Shown here in pieces: positions 7,190-14,004 of a DNA stretch of 64,000 bases. Made by a program: the position numbers and the translations under genes. The DNA is from Mytilus edulis (Eukaryota): positions 54,932,001 through 54,996,000 of the forward strand of contig NC_092353.1 of assembly GCF_963676685.1 (NCBI RefSeq), in the 5' to 3' direction. Below the pieces are notes generated by a model that was given only the letters and a program-made list of their open reading frames with translations, had not been told where the DNA came from and made no database searches. Each line of letters starts with the position of its first letter. Position 1 is the stretch's first letter.

Positions 7190-8285
7190 TTAATAGAACT
7201 TTCAACAATTACATAAAATCAATAATGATAAAGCAGCTTGGACATTTCAACTTGTGCACTCTTGCTTCATAAATGCAATAAAAGTATAAACAGACTAAAA
7301 TACATCGGGAGCACATCTTTTAGTTTTATGGACATTTTTACCTATTACTTCTGCTTTTTGCTTGTTTTATTCACACATTGTTGTCAATGTTATAAATGGA
7401 ATTTTATATGACTGTCATACAAGTGAGAGGTTGAATTAGCTATAAAACTAGGTTTAATCCACCATTTTCTACATAAGAAAACATAAGAAAATGTCTGAAC
7501 CCAGTCAGGAATATGACGGTTCAACTTATATCCATTCGTTTGTTGTGTTTGAGCTTTTGATTTTGCCATTTGATTGAGGACCCTCTGTTTTGAATTTTCC
7601 TTGGAGTTTGGTATTTTTGTTATTTTACATTTTATAGCATTCATCTGTTGTAGGGGAGATGAGGGGCCGTAGAGGGGGAAGCAACTTATTTTTTATTAAG
7701 TTTTGTTTTCACTGAAAATTCACTAACATTTGGTTTAAAAAAACTGGGAACAGTATGTCAATATATATGTTCCTGAAAAAGTACTTATGTATGTTTTTTG
7801 AAAAAAAAGTTTCTAATTAGGTTCAAGTTGAAAAAATATGTTTGTAGCTAGCTAGGTCTTTATAATTATAAAAAAATGTTTGTCCAAGAATACCATCCAT
7901 CTAGCACACGATGAATGGTAGTAGCCAAAGTTATTCTGCAAAAATTCAGCAAAATTCTTTTGAGTTTTCTTCTTATATAGTAACAGAGACATATATACAC
8001 AGAGATTGGCAACTCCGTGAAATCCCGTAAAACATCGCGGCCCGGGATGAGATTCTCGTCGATAAATATTAGAACATGTAATCAAGTCAGGGATGAATAA
8101 CCTCGATAGATTATCAAGAAAAGCAATGGGAAAATGATATCATAATTTTTCCCCAAAAAAATACTTGAATATTATATTTATATATAAGTATTTATTGAGA
8201 AAAATATATTTTCTGCATTTCATAATTAAAAATTCAAATCTGGTAATTTGCCGGGGGTGAAATTCTAAATGGATTAACATTAAAC

Positions 8286-8349
8286 CAGAGACATATATAC
8301 CAAGGATTTGTATAATACAAATCCTTGTATATACGTATATATGTCTCTG
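8286..8349. mobile_element. TIR-only P-family mini-element/footprint containing a second 27-bp TIR-only footprint
   Basis: Same 15-bp TIRs (8286-8300, 8335-8349) with TSD ATTAAAC (8279-8285, 8350-8356); inner palindrome CAAGGATTTGTAT-A-ATACAAATCCTTG (8301-8327) flanked by TATATAC on both sides. Confidence 0.88.
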
Positions 8350-9084
8350 ATTAAACAAATGCAAACATATTAATTGAACCCTGATCTGAACTTTATTTGA
8401 ACAGAAGTACGTATATATTATTAAAACGTGAAAACAAAATTAGTAAATTAACATGTCTAAAAGGGAAAGAAAACTCCTTGTTCTTAAATAAAAAATATGA
8501 TTCGTGGATTTTTTTTTATGTTCCGATTTTATTTCTTTGAAAATTGATTTCCGTGACTTTACATTTCAATATCTGTATGGTGTTTCAGACTTTATAAAGG
8601 AGATTAGCATGCACAATTGAAGTTACTTTTGTGGGGTTCCGGGATTTGTGACCCCCCTTTTTAACCTTAAATGTTTTTGAATTGGGATATAAGATATATC
8701 ACTTTTAAAAATGGCTATTTCCGCTGCTGGATTTGGTCTTCAATCCCATGGAAGATATCTATTTACATTAATTAATGATAATTATTAATTAAATACATCT
8801 TTGTTGGAGCAGTAAAAGACATTACAGCACCGACGATGTATATATAAGGAAATGAGTGAAGCTCTGAGCTTGGGTGGTTACTGATTTGTGATGAGTTAAT
8901 TAATGAACATATTATCAAGCTTGGATGCTTGCGAATATATCAAAAGTTAAAGTTTAAATAAACGTAAATTGAGAAAAAATGTATTCCTTTTTCGGCATTG
9001 TTAATTAATTCAAATTAAAATTTGGCAATGAAAATAACTTCATTTCTATGCAAAACTTTGCACATTACACATGCAAGTGAAATT

Positions 9085-9322
9085 ATGTCGAAATCAGATT
9101 TTTTATCATGGGATGACGATTTAGACGACTTTGAACTAGCATATCTTCTTGGTGATTATACGGACACTGATACTAATGCTGACTCAGTCTCTGCATGCAA
9201 GAAGCCAAAAAAGGACATTCAGTGTTCAGGATATATGTGTCCCGATTGCAAAAAAGTGTTAAAAACAATCTCTGGCTTTCGTGGTCATACAGCAAAACAA
9301 CACGGAAAGAGCAATTTGAAAG
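9085..9322 (+). CDS. Exon 1 of transposon-borne gene: acidic N-terminus + C2H2 zinc finger
   Basis: MSKSDFLSWDDDLDDFELAYLL...YMCPDCKKVLKTISGFRGHTAKQH (C-x2-C-x12-H-x4-H); phase-1 donor AAAG|GTTTGT; alternative in-frame ATG at 9028. Confidence 0.75.
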
Positions 9323-9397
9323 GTTTGTAATATTTTTGTATTGTTTGTCCCAAATATATATATTCCCATATTTCATGAACACTTTTTGTTAAGATAT

Positions 9398-9775
9398 AAA
9401 AAAGGAGATGTGGTATGATTGCCAATGAGACAACTATCCACAAAAGACCAAAATGACACAGACATTAACAACTATAGGTCACCGTACGGCCTTCAACAAT
9501 GAGCAAAGCCCATACCGCATAGTCAGCTATAACAGACCCCGATAAGACAATGTAAAACAATTCAAACGAGAAAACTAACTGCCTTATTTATGTAAAAAAA
9601 TGAACGAAAAACAAATATGTAACACATAAACAAACGACAACCACTGAATTACAGGCTCCCGACTTGGAACAGGCACATACATAAATAATGTGGCGGGTGT
9701 TAAACATGTTAGTGGAATCCCAACCCTCCTAGTGCCCCCTAACCTGGGACAGTGGTATAACAGTACAACATAAGA
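9398..9775. repeat. High-copy interspersed repeat (SINE- or Helitron-like non-autonomous family)
   Basis: GATGTGGTATGATTGCCAATGAGACAACT...GGCCTTCAACAATGAGCAAAGCCCATA...CCACTGAATTACAGGCTC; related fragments near 20-180, 10075-10360, 21125-21280, 33240-33440, 50915-51050. Confidence 0.75.
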
Positions 9776-11696
9776 GCCAAGTTACCTCAAGAAATAATTT
9801 GTTTTTATTATATAGGACATCGAATACATTCTGCAATAGGGACTCAATATATCCTAAAGTAATACTGAAATCCTTTATTATCTCCACTTTGCTTTTTGTC
9901 TTCTTGAGATCTTAACATGACTTATCCAATATCACACAAATGACAAATCCTTTACCACTAACAGAATGAAAACTACATTGAATTAAAAATGTGCCGACCT
10001 AATGGTGTAGAATTACTTACTGTCAATATTTTTTCAAGGCTGAATAACAACAATTTCTATCTCTTCAAAATAAGGAGATGTGGAAAATGAGAATACTATC
10101 CAACTTGAATTTATAAGCAATTATAGATCTCTGTGCATCCTTTAACAATAAGCAAAACCCATTTCTTTAGATATACAAAAGATGTGATATGATTGCCAAT
10201 GAGACAACTCTCCACAAGACCAAATGACACAGAAATTAACAACTATAGGTAAGCGTGTGGCCTTCAACAATGAGCAAAGCCCATATCCCAATTTCAGCTA
10301 TAAAAGGCCACAAAATGACAAATGTAAAATAATTCAAACGACAAAAGTACAGCCTAATTTTTTCTGAAGTCTGGGTGTGTCAGATTTACTCATAACCTTG
10401 AATTCTATATCTTTTTAGTTGATTTGTTTTGCTCACTCTTCAATTTTCTGTGTAGTGCCTTGATGACTGTTATTGTCTTTTTATTGATATTTTTAAATTT
10501 CTGTGTCAATTGCTTTCCTGTAAATATTTGTCTAATTGGCAATCATACCACATCTTGTTTTTATACATAGATGTGTGTTCCTTTTTAGGAGGTTGTTGTC
10601 TCATTGCTTCAACTTATTCATTTTTCTTGTACGATATATATAGACAAATAAGTACAAATATCAGCTTTAAAATTTATTGCTTCTTGACACAATTCCATAT
10701 GGCATTTGTCATCATGATTTATATACAAATAACAAAATATATACATAGATCAAATACATATGATAAAAGAACCCAAAACTAGATATAGGACAATGTTACA
10801 CTACAAGTTCTACACAGTATTATAAAATTTTGAAATAGGATGCCAAAAAAAATCATACAATATAGAACATGCTGACATTCAAAATTGGTCAGGGAAACAC
10901 ACCCGTATCCGCCAATGGGGTTTTGGGGCATATCCCCCCCCCTCCACCCAAGAAAATTTTGAAATTTTAGATGCAAAAATCCCAAAATCTGTGCATACCT
11001 TTTGACATTTTAGGGGTTCAACATATTTTGAAATTTAAACAAGTAATAGGGACAAATTATTTATTTATTTACTGAAAAAGGACTTTCTTGACGGGATATT
11101 AGTAACTGAAATGTCACTTTTCCGGGAAACGGGAAATGGTAACCTTTATGCCCTAGCATGAATAACAGTCTAATATATTATTTAAATTCTAGAAATTATT
11201 ACGAGTGAAAACCCCTTAAAATTCTCAAAGTTGAGTACACATATGTTTATGAATAATAATTTCACCCGATTGGCATTTATTTTTGAATCAAATTAATTGT
11301 GCAAGTTGGAGCACTTAAAATATCCCATGATGGAAGTTTGTTAATATGTAGAATTGACCAAAAAAATCAAACAACAAAGTCTATGTCCATAAAACTGAAC
11401 CATATATTTAAACAATATTGTCATGACATTCCCTAGTAGTCTATGTACATCATGTAAGTTACTCATACATCTTTAATGAAAAAATATCACACAAAAAAAT
11501 ATTTGGTTCGTCAAGCACTCAACAAAAAATACCCAATAAATAAACTAAAAAATGTATACAAATTTCCATTGTTTAACACTTAAAATAATAAAATAAATCC
11601 TCAATACAGTTATTTTTATACATATCATGTTATTTGTTTTTAATTATTTGAATTCATTCTTTCACATGAGAATTATATGATTTTTTTTCATTACAG

Positions 11697-12739
11697 CTTT
11701 TCAACACAGAATCCAAAATGGTGAGGTCCTTCAAGACCAAATAACTACTCCTCAATCAGATAAGAGTCAACAATCTACAATGACAGCAGTCACACTGGAC
11801 TCGATCTTCCAATCTGCATACAACAATACTCTCATATGTATTGAAGAGGACCCTATGTACAATATTTTTGGCGAGTCCACAATAGTTCAAATTGCTAAAA
11901 GCATTTCTGATAGCGTTGAGGTAAAGACATTTTTCTATGACCTGTTCAGGGAGATATTTAACTCAAATCCTAACTTAAGTTTGAATCATGACAGGGAGTT
12001 ATTTTTTACAAAGTTTCATGCTTTAAGACTCAGTTCATCAATTGACAAAGGATACACCGATCACTTCAGTCAAAATGGTTTTACACCTCTGGACAATAAA
12101 AATTTCATTCAAATAGTTATGTTGGAATTAATTAACCAATTGCTTTCTCAACAAACAATCCAAGAACAGAAATCATCCGATATAAATCACTCAGAGCTCA
12201 GCGAGAATGATCAAAATATCTTGTATTACATCTGTGGTTATATCATTCGTGCATGTGAAAAACGCTATTCCAAGCTTAAAGGTGACCTTCGGTCAATGAA
12301 GATCAACTGCATTGAGCAAGTTAAGTCGACATCAACTACTAATTCCTTTGTAAGCAAATACAACAAATGGACAGAGAAGAACGACAGAGGTGGTTTGATA
12401 ATGCCCTCTGACAACTTTTATTTGTTGACCAGGGAATTTGAAACTGTTGTAAGGAAGCACCTAGGAGACCAAGAACTAAATGCTAAATCCCTGCTACATG
12501 ATAAATTGAAAGAACTTATTATGGAATCATTCATGGTAAAATATTACTCTGAGCAGATTTTTGTGGGTATTGACTATGACGACTACGTTTTAATCTTGGA
12601 GGACATCATTCACCTATTTCTGACAATCCGTGGATTTTCTACTGCCAAAGTGATTAGAAACAAAATGATAAAAGACAAGGTCACATCAAAGAAGTCTTTG
12701 AGCCTAAGACAAGTTTTGAAGGAAAAACATAACAATTAA
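11697..12739 (+). CDS. Exon 2 of transposon-borne gene: P-element/THAP9 transposase C-terminal-domain-like protein (spliced product ~426 aa)
   Basis: TTTTTTTTCATTACAG acceptor, phase 1 matching the 9322 donor; stop-free 1043 nt; motifs LSENDQNILYYICGYIIR, DRGGLIMPSD, EFETVVRKH, LFLTIRGF and a basic tail. Confidence 0.82.
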
Positions 12740-13050
12740 CTGTACCATTTGTATACATGTGAAATGTTAAAAACATCAGTTACATTTATCTCAGTGCTTA
12801 GTCTTATTTATTGACTTTTCATAATTATATGTTCATAAACTTTGTTGTTATCATACATTTGCAATGTTCATGTACATGATATGTATATAATTATGAGTTG
12901 ACATTTAAAAAAAATGCAATTTCAGACACATAGACTTACAATTAAAGTTTATCTTAAGCATAACAAATGTTGTCTTTCTTCATTTCTTCATTTTACATTT
13001 ACACATTATAGCATTTACTTAATCTCTACTGGCTTTCAGATAATCAGTAT

Positions 13051-13935
13051 TTATCGTTTTCGTTGTAGTTTCGTGTTGTCGATAACATTTTCATTATTGT
13101 TAACATTTGTTATATTTCCACGCTTGGGATTCAATGCTTGAGCTCCAACAGCACGTAACTGTGTCATGGTATTTCTTACTTCATAAACGCTGGGGTTGTT
13201 ATTGGCTCCTCCCTTGTGTCTATAGTGACCGAAATGTTGTTCTAGGGGGTCTTGGTTGAAGTTGTAAGTTAGTACGAAATCTGCTCCTTGGTCCAACATA
13301 AATTTCACACATTCTGTTATAGAATTTATACTGATTTTCACCCCAGCTATAGTTTGTGCGCTTAGTTGCATAGATAATTTCTGTGAAGGTGTCAGGTTTG
13401 GTCTTTGCATGACTGACTGCTTCCATTCCTTTAAATAGTCCAAAAATGTTGATTTTAACCAAGTAAGTCGAGGATCATCACCACCTGTGAAGGGTTCTAA
13501 ATCAGGATTCCTTTTATTACGTCCTTCAAACAAATTTCTCACATTCAGGCAATCGAAAAATTTATTGAAGTTTCGAATAAACAAAACAGTTTCTGACACA
13601 CTGTCATCATACAAATGTTCCAAGGCATTGGCCACACTACCACTTAAAATTTGAGCAGCCAAATTTACCTTCATATACGTGAATGCTGCCAGGTCAATGT
13701 GGCTCCTTGTCAACTTTGGACAGGGACTATATAGTTGCAACTCACAGTGTTCCTCAAACAGTCTCACCATGTGCATCCAAGAGATGTCTTTTCCATTTTT
13801 CCATAGTCGTCTGGTGTTTTTATGGGAGAATGAGTTGCTAAAACAGTTTCTGGCAGTCTTAATTAAATGGGGGACATCTGAGATAAAATACAAATTTCTG
13901 CTGTTGTCATGTGGGTTGATGGTGAAATAAACGGG
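13051..13935 (-). pseudogene. 5'-deleted P-element/THAP9-type transposase (294 aa remnant, stop-free)
   Basis: LYFISDVPHLIKTARNC (D/CxxH motif), KLTRSHI...MKVNLAAQILS (GTP-binding insertion), FNQDPLEQHFG...GGANNNP (catalytic Glu). The N-terminal region and first two catalytic Asp are absent; homology runs directly into the TIR. Confidence 0.92.
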
Positions 13936-14004
13936 TATATATGTCTCTGATAGTAACACTATATAAATCCTTGATTTATCATGTTTTGATCTGATGTACA
14001 CTAT

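What the first reader, a model, noticed from the sequence alone, without database searches (positions are those of the whole stretch)
7984..13949. Apparently bipartite (split-transposase) P element: catalytic core and C-terminal domain on two convergent genes inside one TIR pair
Seen: perfect 15-bp TIRs and a 7-bp TSD enclose (i) a minus-strand P/THAP9-type transposase that ends with its own stop shortly after the QDPLE catalytic motif (...KRGN...NTKLQRKR*), and (ii) a plus-strand spliced gene whose C-terminal half carries YYICGYIIR...DRGGLIMPSD...EFETVVRKH...FLTIRG. The stops are 311 bp apart. Established: in Drosophila P transposase and THAP9, a C-terminal domain with similar Y-I-A-G-Y and G-L-x-x-P-S motifs follows the RNase H domain on the same polypeptide, and P elements are considered single-gene, unlike PIF/Harbinger, CACTA, MuDR or Kolobok. 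Inference: this lineage has fissioned its transposase and supplies the C-terminal domain in trans as an accessory subunit or regulator. I know of no formal description of this, but cannot check the literature.
Basis: partly seen in the sequence, partly recalled or inferred. Interest (0 to 1): 0.9.

Follow-up and report, generated by a model that had tools for sequence, protein, structure and literature searches.

The report
Two-gene P-type transposon, deleted copy
This is a broken copy of a mussel jumping gene of the P-element kind whose lineage, unlike the fruit-fly P element, encodes the tail region of its transposase as a separate neighbouring gene; many molluscs share this design and I found no description of it.

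Summary
The TIRs, 7-bp TSD, spliced plus-strand gene, minus-strand P-type ORF and 311-bp gap are all real. One correction: the minus-strand ORF is not a catalytic core. It holds only the GTP-binding insertion domain and the C-terminal piece of RNase H, and it abuts the right TIR. This copy is therefore an internally deleted, non-autonomous element.

- **Short transposase end.** A full-length transposase of the same family (928 aa) and 85 homologs from several phyla all stop 57-85 residues after NQDPLE, without a CTD.
- **Linked second gene.** It lies beside transposase homologs at 16 loci in this genome, and apparently next to them in Haliotis, Batillaria and M. galloprovincialis. The two proteins co-diverge (Mantel r 0.96).
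- **Homology to the CTD.** The second protein's profile matches the C-terminal region that two distant transposases carry in cis (E 1e-17). Its model's single best match among 48,161 PDB representatives is the Drosophila P transposase CTD (Z 10.5).

Whether the protein is a required subunit or a regulator is untested. I found no published description, though Repbase was not searchable. I class it as a new variant of a known kind.

The parts
7977..7983 (.). Left target-site duplication, ATAGTAA
   Evidence: Identical 7-mer at 13950-13956.
7984..7998 (+). Left terminal inverted repeat, CAGAGACATATATAC. It extends to about 18 nt (…ACA) when compared with the C13 copy.
7999..9084 (+). Left subterminal region, the presumed promoter and 5' UTR of the second gene. 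It contains the nested footprints.
   Evidence: No convincing repeated binding motif was found.
8279..8356 (.). Nested TIR-only remnants. A 15+15-nt remnant of this family (8286-8349, TSD ATTAAAC) encloses a 14+13-nt remnant of the CAAGGATTTGTATAG family (8301-8327, TSD TATATAC). I read both as P-type excision footprints.
   Evidence: The site is empty in the C13 copy.
9085..9322 (+). Second gene, exon 1: an acidic/aromatic N-terminal peptide (SDFLSWDDDLD) and one C2H2-type zinc finger.
   Evidence: Weak C2H2 Pfam hits. Collinear with intronless relatives. Equals P0016 residues 1-79.
9323..11696 (+). Intron (GT...AG, phase 1), filled with unrelated MITE-like repeats.
11697..12739 (+). Second gene, exon 2, including the stop: a helical region followed by a P/THAP9-CTD-like domain carrying YYICGYIIR, DRGGLIMPSD and FLTIRG.
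   Evidence: Pfam Tnp_P_element_C E 1.9e-4, 22.4 bits against a cut-off of 22.6. Structure match to 6p5a_B, Z 10.5. Profile match to cis-fused relatives.
12740..13050 (.). 311-bp spacer between the two convergent stop codons.
13051..13934 (-). 3' remnant of the transposase gene: GTP-binding insertion domain, the C-terminal part of RNase H with NQDPLE, a 60-aa tail and the stop. About 630 N-terminal codons are deleted.
   Evidence: Pfam. L004 and P0039 continue upstream of the breakpoint.
13935..13949 (-). Right TIR. Only 14-15 nt are retained, and the deletion junction lies at 13934/13935.
13950..13956 (.). Right target-site duplication, ATAGTAA

Best explanation
Window 7984-13949 is an internally deleted, non-autonomous copy of a recently mobile P-superfamily DNA transposon of Mytilus.

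Its lineage is a two-gene variant of the P element. One gene encodes a transposase with the HTH, the split RNase H and the GTP-binding insertion domain. That transposase stops about 65 residues after the catalytic glutamate and has neither a Pfam-detectable THAP domain nor a CTD. The other gene lies inside the same TIRs. It encodes a protein of about 410-430 aa made of an acidic peptide, one C2H2 finger and a helical region of about 310 aa. The last 160 residues of that region correspond to the P/THAP9 C-terminal domain.

The most economical history is a fission of the ancestral transposase within the disordered linker between RNase H and the CTD.

Inferred mechanism: the second protein joins the transposase on the transposon ends and supplies in trans the DNA contacts that the CTD makes in the Drosophila complex. 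There the CTD already sits against the GBD of the other subunit. Its zinc finger may contribute to end recognition.

My odds:
- two-gene architecture and homology of the second protein to the CTD region: 0.85-0.9
- fission rather than fusion: 0.75
- the protein acts physically with the transposase or the transposon ends: 0.7
- within that, required cofactor and modulator/inhibitor are about equally likely.

In this copy only the second gene is intact, so the element could move only with transposase supplied from elsewhere.
For: SHOWN
- TIRs and TSD in four independent insertions.
- The window ORF holds only GBD + RNaseH_C. L004 and P0039 extend past the breakpoint.
- Full-length relatives carry RNaseH_N + GBD + RNaseH_C and no CTD. 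D466, D574 and E825 are invariant or nearly invariant in 48 sequences.
- The tail after NQDPLE is 57-85 aa in 85 homologs.
- Second-gene homologs lie within about 6 kb of transposase homologs at 16 loci. Fourteen pairs are convergent. Two, in the 54% clade, are divergent.
- Consecutive accession numbers for the two proteins in Haliotis cracherodii (three pairs), M. galloprovincialis and Batillaria.
- Distances of the two proteins correlate across 9 linked pairs: Mantel r 0.96, p 2e-4.
- dN/dS of the second gene is 0.05-0.48 among copies of one family.
- The second-protein profile finds 2389 cluster representatives. The best 150 are all stand-alone proteins under 500 aa.
- The same profile matches residues 769-1104 of P0117 and 709-977 of P0126, downstream of their RNaseH_C.
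- The AF2 model (mean pLDDT 72; about 80-89 over most of the helical part) has 6p5a_B residues 617-734 as its top hit among 48,161 chains. Z is 10.5 and the next hit scores 7.8.
- Most family members carry a precomputed THAP9_C (PF22824) hit.

FROM THE LITERATURE
- The Drosophila CTD is joined by a disordered linker and lies between RNase H and the GBD of the other subunit (PMC7776569).
Against:
- Sequence links to the canonical CTD are borderline. Pfam PF12596 scores 22.4 bits against a cut-off of 22.6, and lower in relatives. A profile search of PDB sequences did not find TNP.
- Only two cis-fused relatives were found. One has no known taxon and the other is a sponge gene model. The tree is unrooted, so the polarity rests on the outgroup state in Drosophila P and THAP9.
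- A 2026 preprint reports that CTD-deleted DmTNP and hTHAP9 still excise and integrate (10.64898/2026.08.31.747927). That weakens the 'required subunit' reading.
- Adjacency in other species is inferred from accession order and contig lengths, not from coordinates.
- No full-length copy of the window's own family exists in this assembly. The one known transposase of that family (P0039) carries K in place of the catalytic E.
Confidence: 0.8

Rival explanations
1. Same two-gene architecture, but the second protein is mainly a negative regulator. It would be a trans-acting version of an auto-inhibitory CTD, comparable in effect to the KP or 66-kDa repressors of the Drosophila P element, and not a subunit needed for transposition.
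For: - The preprint 10.64898/2026.08.31.747927 reports that CTD-deleted DmTNP and hTHAP9 remain active, and that hTHAP9 without its CTD integrates more.
- Several non-autonomous derivatives keep an intact second gene while losing the transposase: the window copy, the C13 copy, L045 and L046-L048. dN/dS is below 1.
Against: - The tight co-divergence with the transposase and the loss of a detectable THAP domain in this clade fit an integral partner at least as well.
- Derivatives that retain the second gene can also arise from one-sided gap repair starting at the end next to that gene.
Confidence: 0.35
2. The polarity is reversed. The two-gene state is ancestral, and the single-gene P/THAP9 transposases, like P0117 and P0126, arose by gene fusion.
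For: - The tree is unrooted.
- Two-gene forms are numerous and span several phyla.
Against: - Drosophila P, THAP9 and the sponge-associated clade all carry the region in cis. That would require several independent fusions at the same junction.
- The C2H2 N-terminal addition is absent from the cis forms. The profile match starts at position 98-140.
Confidence: 0.15
3. The second gene is an unrelated captured host gene or a generic helical protein, and its likeness to the CTD is convergence or chance.
For: - Helical proteins can reach middling Z scores by chance, as the notes to say.
- The Pfam hits lie at or below the cut-off.
Against: - It is the single top hit of 48,161 chains. All 118 target residues align at 20% identity.
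- E 1e-17 profile matches to the C-termini of true transposase homologs.
- Co-divergence with the transposase.
- It lies inside the TIRs in several families.
Confidence: 0.04
4. The arrangement is a local rearrangement of this copy, such as an inversion of the CTD-coding part of an ordinary single-gene P element.
For: The copy is rearranged, since it carries an internal deletion.
Against: - The same arrangement occurs at 16 loci, in families 54-66% identical and in other species.
- The second gene has its own start, zinc finger and intron.
Confidence: 0.01

Closest known systems
Drosophila P element and vertebrate THAP9 / Pdre-type P-like elements (P superfamily)
   Same: [quoted passage not shown]
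- Short TIRs and a 7-8-bp TSD.
- Internal-deletion derivatives.
- TIR remnants of 11-15 nt per end, which fit the long staggered cut of P transposase.
- A helical CTD of the same fold.
   Different: - The CTD region is encoded by a separate gene that also carries a C2H2 finger.
- The transposase has no Pfam-detectable THAP domain.
- The TSD is 7 bp, not 8.
- The TIR is only about 15-18 nt.
ProtoRAG / RAG-like transposons (Transib-derived; convergent RAG1L and RAG2L inside TIRs)
   Same: Two convergent genes inside one TIR pair: a DDE-type catalytic protein and a second protein that travels with it. Such elements are found in the same kinds of marine invertebrates (PMC7204232, listed).
   Different: RAG2L is a kelch-repeat protein unrelated to any part of RAG1. 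Here the second protein is homologous to a region that relatives carry on the transposase itself.
PIF/Harbinger (transposase plus a Myb-like DNA-binding protein)
   Same: A two-protein system in which a small DNA-binding protein encoded in the element partners the DDE transposase.
   Different: Different superfamily, a 3-bp TSD, and the Myb-like protein is not a detached transposase domain.
KP and 66-kDa repressors of the Drosophila P element
   Same: Element-encoded non-catalytic proteins that act in trans on transposition. Deleted elements that keep such a coding capacity can spread.
   Different: KP and the 66-kDa protein are N-terminal fragments (THAP plus dimerisation) of the one transposase gene. 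Here the trans-acting protein corresponds to the C-terminal region and is a dedicated, conserved gene.

Membership tests
P superfamily of DNA transposons (the element) | Transposase with an RNase H fold interrupted by the TNP-like GTP-binding insertion domain. | tested here: met
   Full-length relatives and P0027 have RNaseH_N + GBD + RNaseH_C, all above the Pfam cut-offs. The window remnant keeps GBD (75.6 bits) and RNaseH_C (32.5 bits) only.
P superfamily of DNA transposons (the element) | Conserved D, D, E catalytic triad. | tested here: met
   D466 (nearly invariant), D574 and E825 (both invariant) in a 48-sequence alignment. The window copy retains only the E (NQDPLE), because the two Asp residues are deleted.
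P superfamily of DNA transposons (the element) | Short TIRs and a 7-8-bp target-site duplication. | tested here: met
   7-bp TSDs at four insertions and at three footprints. That the superfamily range is 7-8 bp is from my own knowledge.
P superfamily of DNA transposons (the element) | Long (17-nt) staggered cleavage at the ends. | tested here: inconclusive
   TIR-only remnants of 11+11, 15+15 and 14+13 nt, and deletion derivatives that keep 12-18 nt of the right TIR, fit a cut of 17 nt or less (PMC7776569). They are not a biochemical test.
P superfamily of DNA transposons (the element) | GTP dependence of transposition. | not testable with these tools
   Only the presence of the GBD is shown.
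Canonical P element / THAP9 transposase architecture | [quoted passage not shown] | tested here: not met
   No THAP hit in the 930-aa and 855-aa frames or in P0027. Of the 120 listed homologs, only the Hydra protein P0131 has one.
Canonical P element / THAP9 transposase architecture | C-terminal domain on the same polypeptide as RNase H. | tested here: not met
   The stop falls 57-85 aa after NQDPLE in 85 homologs. The second-protein profile hits only 2 of the 120 transposase homologs.
P/THAP9 C-terminal domain (Pfam Tnp_P_element_C PF12596, THAP9_C PF22824): the second protein | Pfam model hit above the gathering score. | tested here: inconclusive
   PF12596 scores 22.4 bits against a cut-off of 22.6 for the window protein, and 13.9-14.7 bits or no hit in relatives. 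PF22824 is listed as a precomputed hit for most family members, but the scan of the local Pfam copy did not return it. A genome search with the PF22824 model also gave nothing, and its controls were silent.
P/THAP9 C-terminal domain (Pfam Tnp_P_element_C PF12596, THAP9_C PF22824): the second protein | Same fold as the solved Drosophila TNP CTD. | tested here: met
   6p5a_B residues 617-734: Z 10.5, rmsd 2.9 A, 118/118 aligned, 20% identity. It ranks 1 of 48,161, and the next hit scores Z 7.8. Foldseek probability 0.87.
P/THAP9 C-terminal domain (Pfam Tnp_P_element_C PF12596, THAP9_C PF22824): the second protein | Sequence homology to the C-terminal region of bona fide P-type transposases. | tested here: met
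   hmmsearch E 1.4e-17 (P0117, residues 769-1104) and 2.8e-16 (P0126, residues 709-977). hhalign gives 96.7% over 236 columns, including the L-Y-x-x-G-Y, RGGL and IRGF motifs.

The most novel reading that the evidence does not exclude
A large, old, multi-phylum branch of the P superfamily (molluscs, and probably annelids, hemichordates and echinoderms) is an obligate two-component transposase. The catalytic protein has lost its THAP domain. Recognition of the transposon ends has moved to a detached C2H2-plus-CTD subunit, so both proteins are needed for transposition. Deleted elements that keep only the second gene would then act as KP-like modulators. This would be a P-superfamily counterpart of RAG1/RAG2, and a natural experiment on what the P/THAP9 CTD does.
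Probability: 0.3. Interest if true: 0.8.

Novelty: new variant of a known kind. Interest (0 to 1): 0.64.

Why it matters
P elements are the textbook single-gene eukaryotic DNA transposon, and the role of their C-terminal domain is only now being examined. A 2026 preprint states that the fold occurs only in TNP and THAP9 homologs, and finds it dispensable or inhibitory.

A widespread natural lineage in which this region is a separate, conserved, co-evolving gene offers several things:
- a ready-made system to ask what the CTD does, whether cofactor, end-recognition module or brake
- an example of transposase gene fission at a disordered linker
- an explanation for thousands of 'uncharacterized C2H2-type domain-containing' proteins annotated in mollusc and other invertebrate genomes
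- better TE annotation for bivalve genomes.

The family also looks recently active, judging from 98-99% identical copies, footprints and a transposase seen in another M. edulis assembly but not in this one. That makes experiments realistic.

Tried and rejected
- Complex prediction on the cognate M. coruscus pair (transposase 340-889 with second protein 100-411): no verdict, score 0.00, and the alignments were not used. This is not evidence either way.
Adjacency there rests on consecutive accession numbers and locus tags.
The right end of the full-length 66% relative (L039 family) was placed only indirectly through the inverted copy L034. The element would be about 12 kb, and this is not verified.
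- A profile search of PDB sequences found only zinc-finger chains, not TNP.
- Genome searches with PF22824 and PF12596 returned nothing, and the controls were silent too. These are uninformative.
- The search for homologous proteins on the C-terminal region of P0117 found only P0117 itself.
- In the 54% family (L041/L042) the shared right boundary is not a matching TIR and shows no TSD. Whether both genes lie inside one TIR pair there is unproven.
- No repeated subterminal motif that could serve as a binding site stood out at 7984-9084.
- KolobokP (PMC9587614) was checked as a possible identity and rejected: it is a different superfamily with a different second protein.
- I never joined the two exons myself. 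The database protein P0016 stood in for the spliced product.


Full report
**1. What is in the window**

The element is bounded by CAGAGACATATATAC at 7984-7998 and its perfect reverse complement at 13935-13949. It is flanked by the 7-bp duplication ATAGTAA at 7977-7983 and 13950-13956. The 12-nt TIR core gives four perfect matches in the window, plus one with a mismatch, against 0.38 expected. Two of the four are the element ends. The other two belong to a nested remnant at 8286-8349.

The genome is a 1.37-Gb Mytilus assembly. Protein names point to M. edulis. It holds a second copy on another chromosome (G000:C13:50176760-50182633, 98% identical) with its own 7-bp duplication, GTCTAAT. The element has therefore transposed recently.

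**2. The plus-strand gene**

Exon 1 (9085-9322) ends at a GT. Exon 2 (11697-12739) follows an AG, and the phases fit. The annotated 426-aa M. galloprovincialis protein P0016 equals exon 1, one junction Ala and exon 2, apart from a single residue. Related families in this genome encode the same protein without an intron, collinear from MSDFLSWD... to ...SLRQALKEK.

The protein has an acidic/aromatic N-terminal peptide and one C2H2-type finger, for which the Pfam hits are weak. It continues with an all-helical region of about 310 aa.

**3. The minus-strand ORF is a remnant, not a catalytic core**

Translation of 13054-13950 matches only TNP-like_GBD (E 5.5e-21) and TNP-like_RNaseH_C (E 8.4e-8). 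There is no RNaseH_N. The P-type sequence begins directly at the right TIR.

A 93-96% identical degraded copy (L004) continues past the window's breakpoint (…acggg|) into sequence encoding …FDEIKI…CDGASANRRFF…, which is the RNase H N-terminal half. The database protein P0039 (M. edulis, 928 aa) is 98% identical to the remnant over 292 residues. It extends 630 residues further N-terminally and ends at the same stop.

The window copy is therefore an internal-deletion derivative that keeps only 14-15 nt of its right TIR. The C13 copy has a different junction and keeps 17-18 nt, so the two deletions are independent. A deleted member of a sister family (L046) keeps 12-13 nt. These lengths, all 18 nt or less, fit joining to the long single-stranded TIR overhang that P transposase leaves (17 nt in Drosophila, PMC7776569). 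So do the TIR-only remnants of 15+15 and 14+13 nt in the window and of 11+11 nt in the C13 copy. This reading is an inference.

**4. The short transposase end is a property of the lineage**

Full-length relatives in this genome, at 66% identity (766-aa ORF in a 930-codon open frame) and at 54% (789 aa), end at the homologous …IDNxxLPKR…. They carry RNaseH_N + GBD + RNaseH_C and no CTD.

Among the 120 listed database homologs, 85 have a recognisable NQDPLE motif. In those the tail after the motif is 57-85 residues, mostly 60-70. They come from Mytilus, scallops, oysters, clams, abalone, limpets, periwinkles, hemichordates and echinoderms; more distant homologs in the same list come from cnidarians and sponges. 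The catalytic D, D and E are invariant or nearly so in a 48-sequence alignment. No THAP domain is detected, except in a Hydra protein.

**5. The second gene travels with the transposase**

In this genome, homologs of the two proteins lie within about 6 kb of each other at 16 loci. Fourteen pairs are convergent, as in the window. In the 54% family the two genes are divergent. Linkage has therefore survived a rearrangement of gene order.

The two proteins have consecutive accession numbers or locus tags in other molluscs:
- Haliotis cracherodii: XP_071101730/31, XP_071101734/35 and XP_071086041/42
- M. galloprovincialis: LOC143055246/47
- Batillaria attramentaria: BaRGS_00015958/59

I take this as adjacency, but I could not read the coordinates.

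Across nine linked pairs, the distances of the two proteins correlate with Mantel r = 0.96 and p = 2e-4. Within one family the second gene shows dN/dS of 0.05-0.48. The gene is thus an integral, selected part of these elements.

Its profile finds 2389 cluster representatives at E <= 0.001. The best 150 are all stand-alone proteins of 92-493 aa. Sampled taxa also include an annelid (Owenia) and a hemichordate (Ptychodera).

**6. Homology to the P/THAP9 C-terminal region**

There are three lines of evidence.
- *Pfam.* Tnp_P_element_C hits the YYICGYIIR region at E 1.9e-4, but at 22.4 bits against a cut-off of 22.6. Most family members carry a precomputed THAP9_C hit. On its own this is borderline.
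- *Profile against transposases.* The second-protein profile, searched against the 120 transposase homologs, hits exactly two. P0117 (1109 aa) matches at residues 769-1104 with E 1.4e-17. P0126 (the sponge Ephydatia, 977 aa) matches at residues 709-977 with E 2.8e-16. Both matches lie downstream of RNaseH_C. hhalign gives 96.7% over 236 columns, with the L-Y-x-x-G-Y, RGGL and IRGF motifs aligned. Some relatives therefore carry the whole helical region in cis.
- *Structure.* The AF2 model (mean pLDDT 72; about 80-89 over most of the helical part) was compared with 48,161 PDB representatives without a Foldseek prefilter. Its single hit at Z >= 8 is the Drosophila P transposase CTD, 6p5a_B residues 617-734. 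The match has Z 10.5, rmsd 2.9 A, all 118 residues aligned and 20% identity. The next hit scores Z 7.8.

A profile search of PDB sequences did not find TNP, so the link to Drosophila itself is structural, not sequence-based.

**7. History and mechanism**

In the Drosophila complex the CTD hangs on a disordered linker. It packs between RNase H and the GBD of the other subunit, and it contacts transposon and target DNA (PMC7776569). A break in that linker would leave a domain that already works 'in trans' within the dimer. The transposases here stop about where that linker would begin.

In a quick, unrooted tree the two cis-fused proteins group with a sponge sequence, outside the mollusc/deuterostome two-gene clade. 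This agrees with fission but does not prove the polarity.

What the protein does is not shown. It could be a required or stimulating subunit. In that case its finger might replace the lost THAP domain in end recognition. It could instead be a brake. A 2026 preprint reports that CTD-deleted DmTNP and hTHAP9 still excise and integrate, and that hTHAP9 without its CTD integrates more (10.64898/2026.08.31.747927). In addition, several deleted elements retain an intact second gene, which recalls KP elements. I give about equal odds to the two roles.

**8. Novelty**

Seven full-text searches found no description of a two-gene or split P-type element. The 2026 preprint states that the CTD fold occurs only in TNP and THAP9 homologs. 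Repbase and Dfam could not be searched, so a prior note there cannot be excluded.

The scan's own notes already list the accessory protein (s1-832521) and the nested footprints (s1-832595) on this same window. I checked both here.

**9. Limits**

The complex prediction gave no verdict.

Noticed in passing
window 8279-8356: Nested TIR-only remnants. A 30-bp remnant (15+15 nt) of this family has TSD ATTAAAC. Inside it sits a 27-bp remnant (14+13 nt) of the sister family with TIR CAAGGATTTGTATAG and TSD TATATAC. The site is empty in the C13 copy. They look like P-type excision footprints, and the scan already noted them as s1-832595.
   Followed up: partly
L002:1834-1855 (G000:C13, about 50177093): A 22-bp insertion, CAGAGACATAT|ATATGTCTCTG, flanked by the duplication CCTGATC and absent from the window copy. 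It is another 11+11-nt footprint of the same family inside a sister copy.
   Followed up: partly
window 13934/13935; L002:7377-7393; L046 right end: Three deletion derivatives keep only 12-18 nt of the right TIR, joined directly to internal sequence. This is what one-sided gap repair joined to a 17-nt overhang would leave.
   Followed up: partly
window 13958-13974 and 7762-7775: Isolated terminal sequences of two sister P-type families lie just outside the element. CTATATAAATCCTTG lies 8 nt beyond the right TSD, and the reverse complement of CAGGAACATATATA lies 209 nt before the left TIR. The second could be chance: 6 of 100 shuffles gave a match.
   Followed up: partly
window 9399-9792 and 10156-10606 (inside the intron): Copies of an abundant MITE-like repeat (AAGGAGATGTGGTATGATTGCCAATGAGACAAC…) fill the intron. 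The first-look genome search with the whole element (so not this repeat alone) gave 11,297 candidates, and dozens of 93-96% identical 370-400-bp copies of the repeat were scored.
   Followed up: no
L034 (G000:C10:60629000-60638999) against L039 (G000:C10:60585000-60594999): The same 2.1-kb flank, 99.95% identical, abuts the second-gene end of the element in L039 and the transposase end in L034. The two loci are 44 kb apart. This could be an inverted segmental duplication, a TIR-mediated inversion or an assembly artefact.
   Followed up: no
P0039 residues 858-864: The only full-length transposase found for the window's own family reads KQDPLK where the window remnant reads NQDPLE. The catalytic Glu is replaced by Lys, so that copy is probably inactive too.
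   Followed up: no
Alignment A4, P0027 positions 189-258: The transposase N-terminal region has invariant Cys at 189, 242, 251 and 254 (…VCxGN…CxLL…RCxxC…) with no Pfam match. It may be a zinc module that takes the place of THAP.
   Followed up: no
L046, L047, L048, L045: 2.4-4.7-kb derivatives of two sister families retain an intact second gene (open frames of 433 or 360 codons) and no transposase. L046 has TSD TGTTGAT and L045 has TSD GTACAGG.
   Followed up: partly
L041 / L042 (G000:C8:80882654-80892318; C9): In the 54% family the two genes are divergent, not convergent. The left end is CAGGAACATATATATTAACGG. The shared right boundary has no matching TIR and no TSD.
   Followed up: partly
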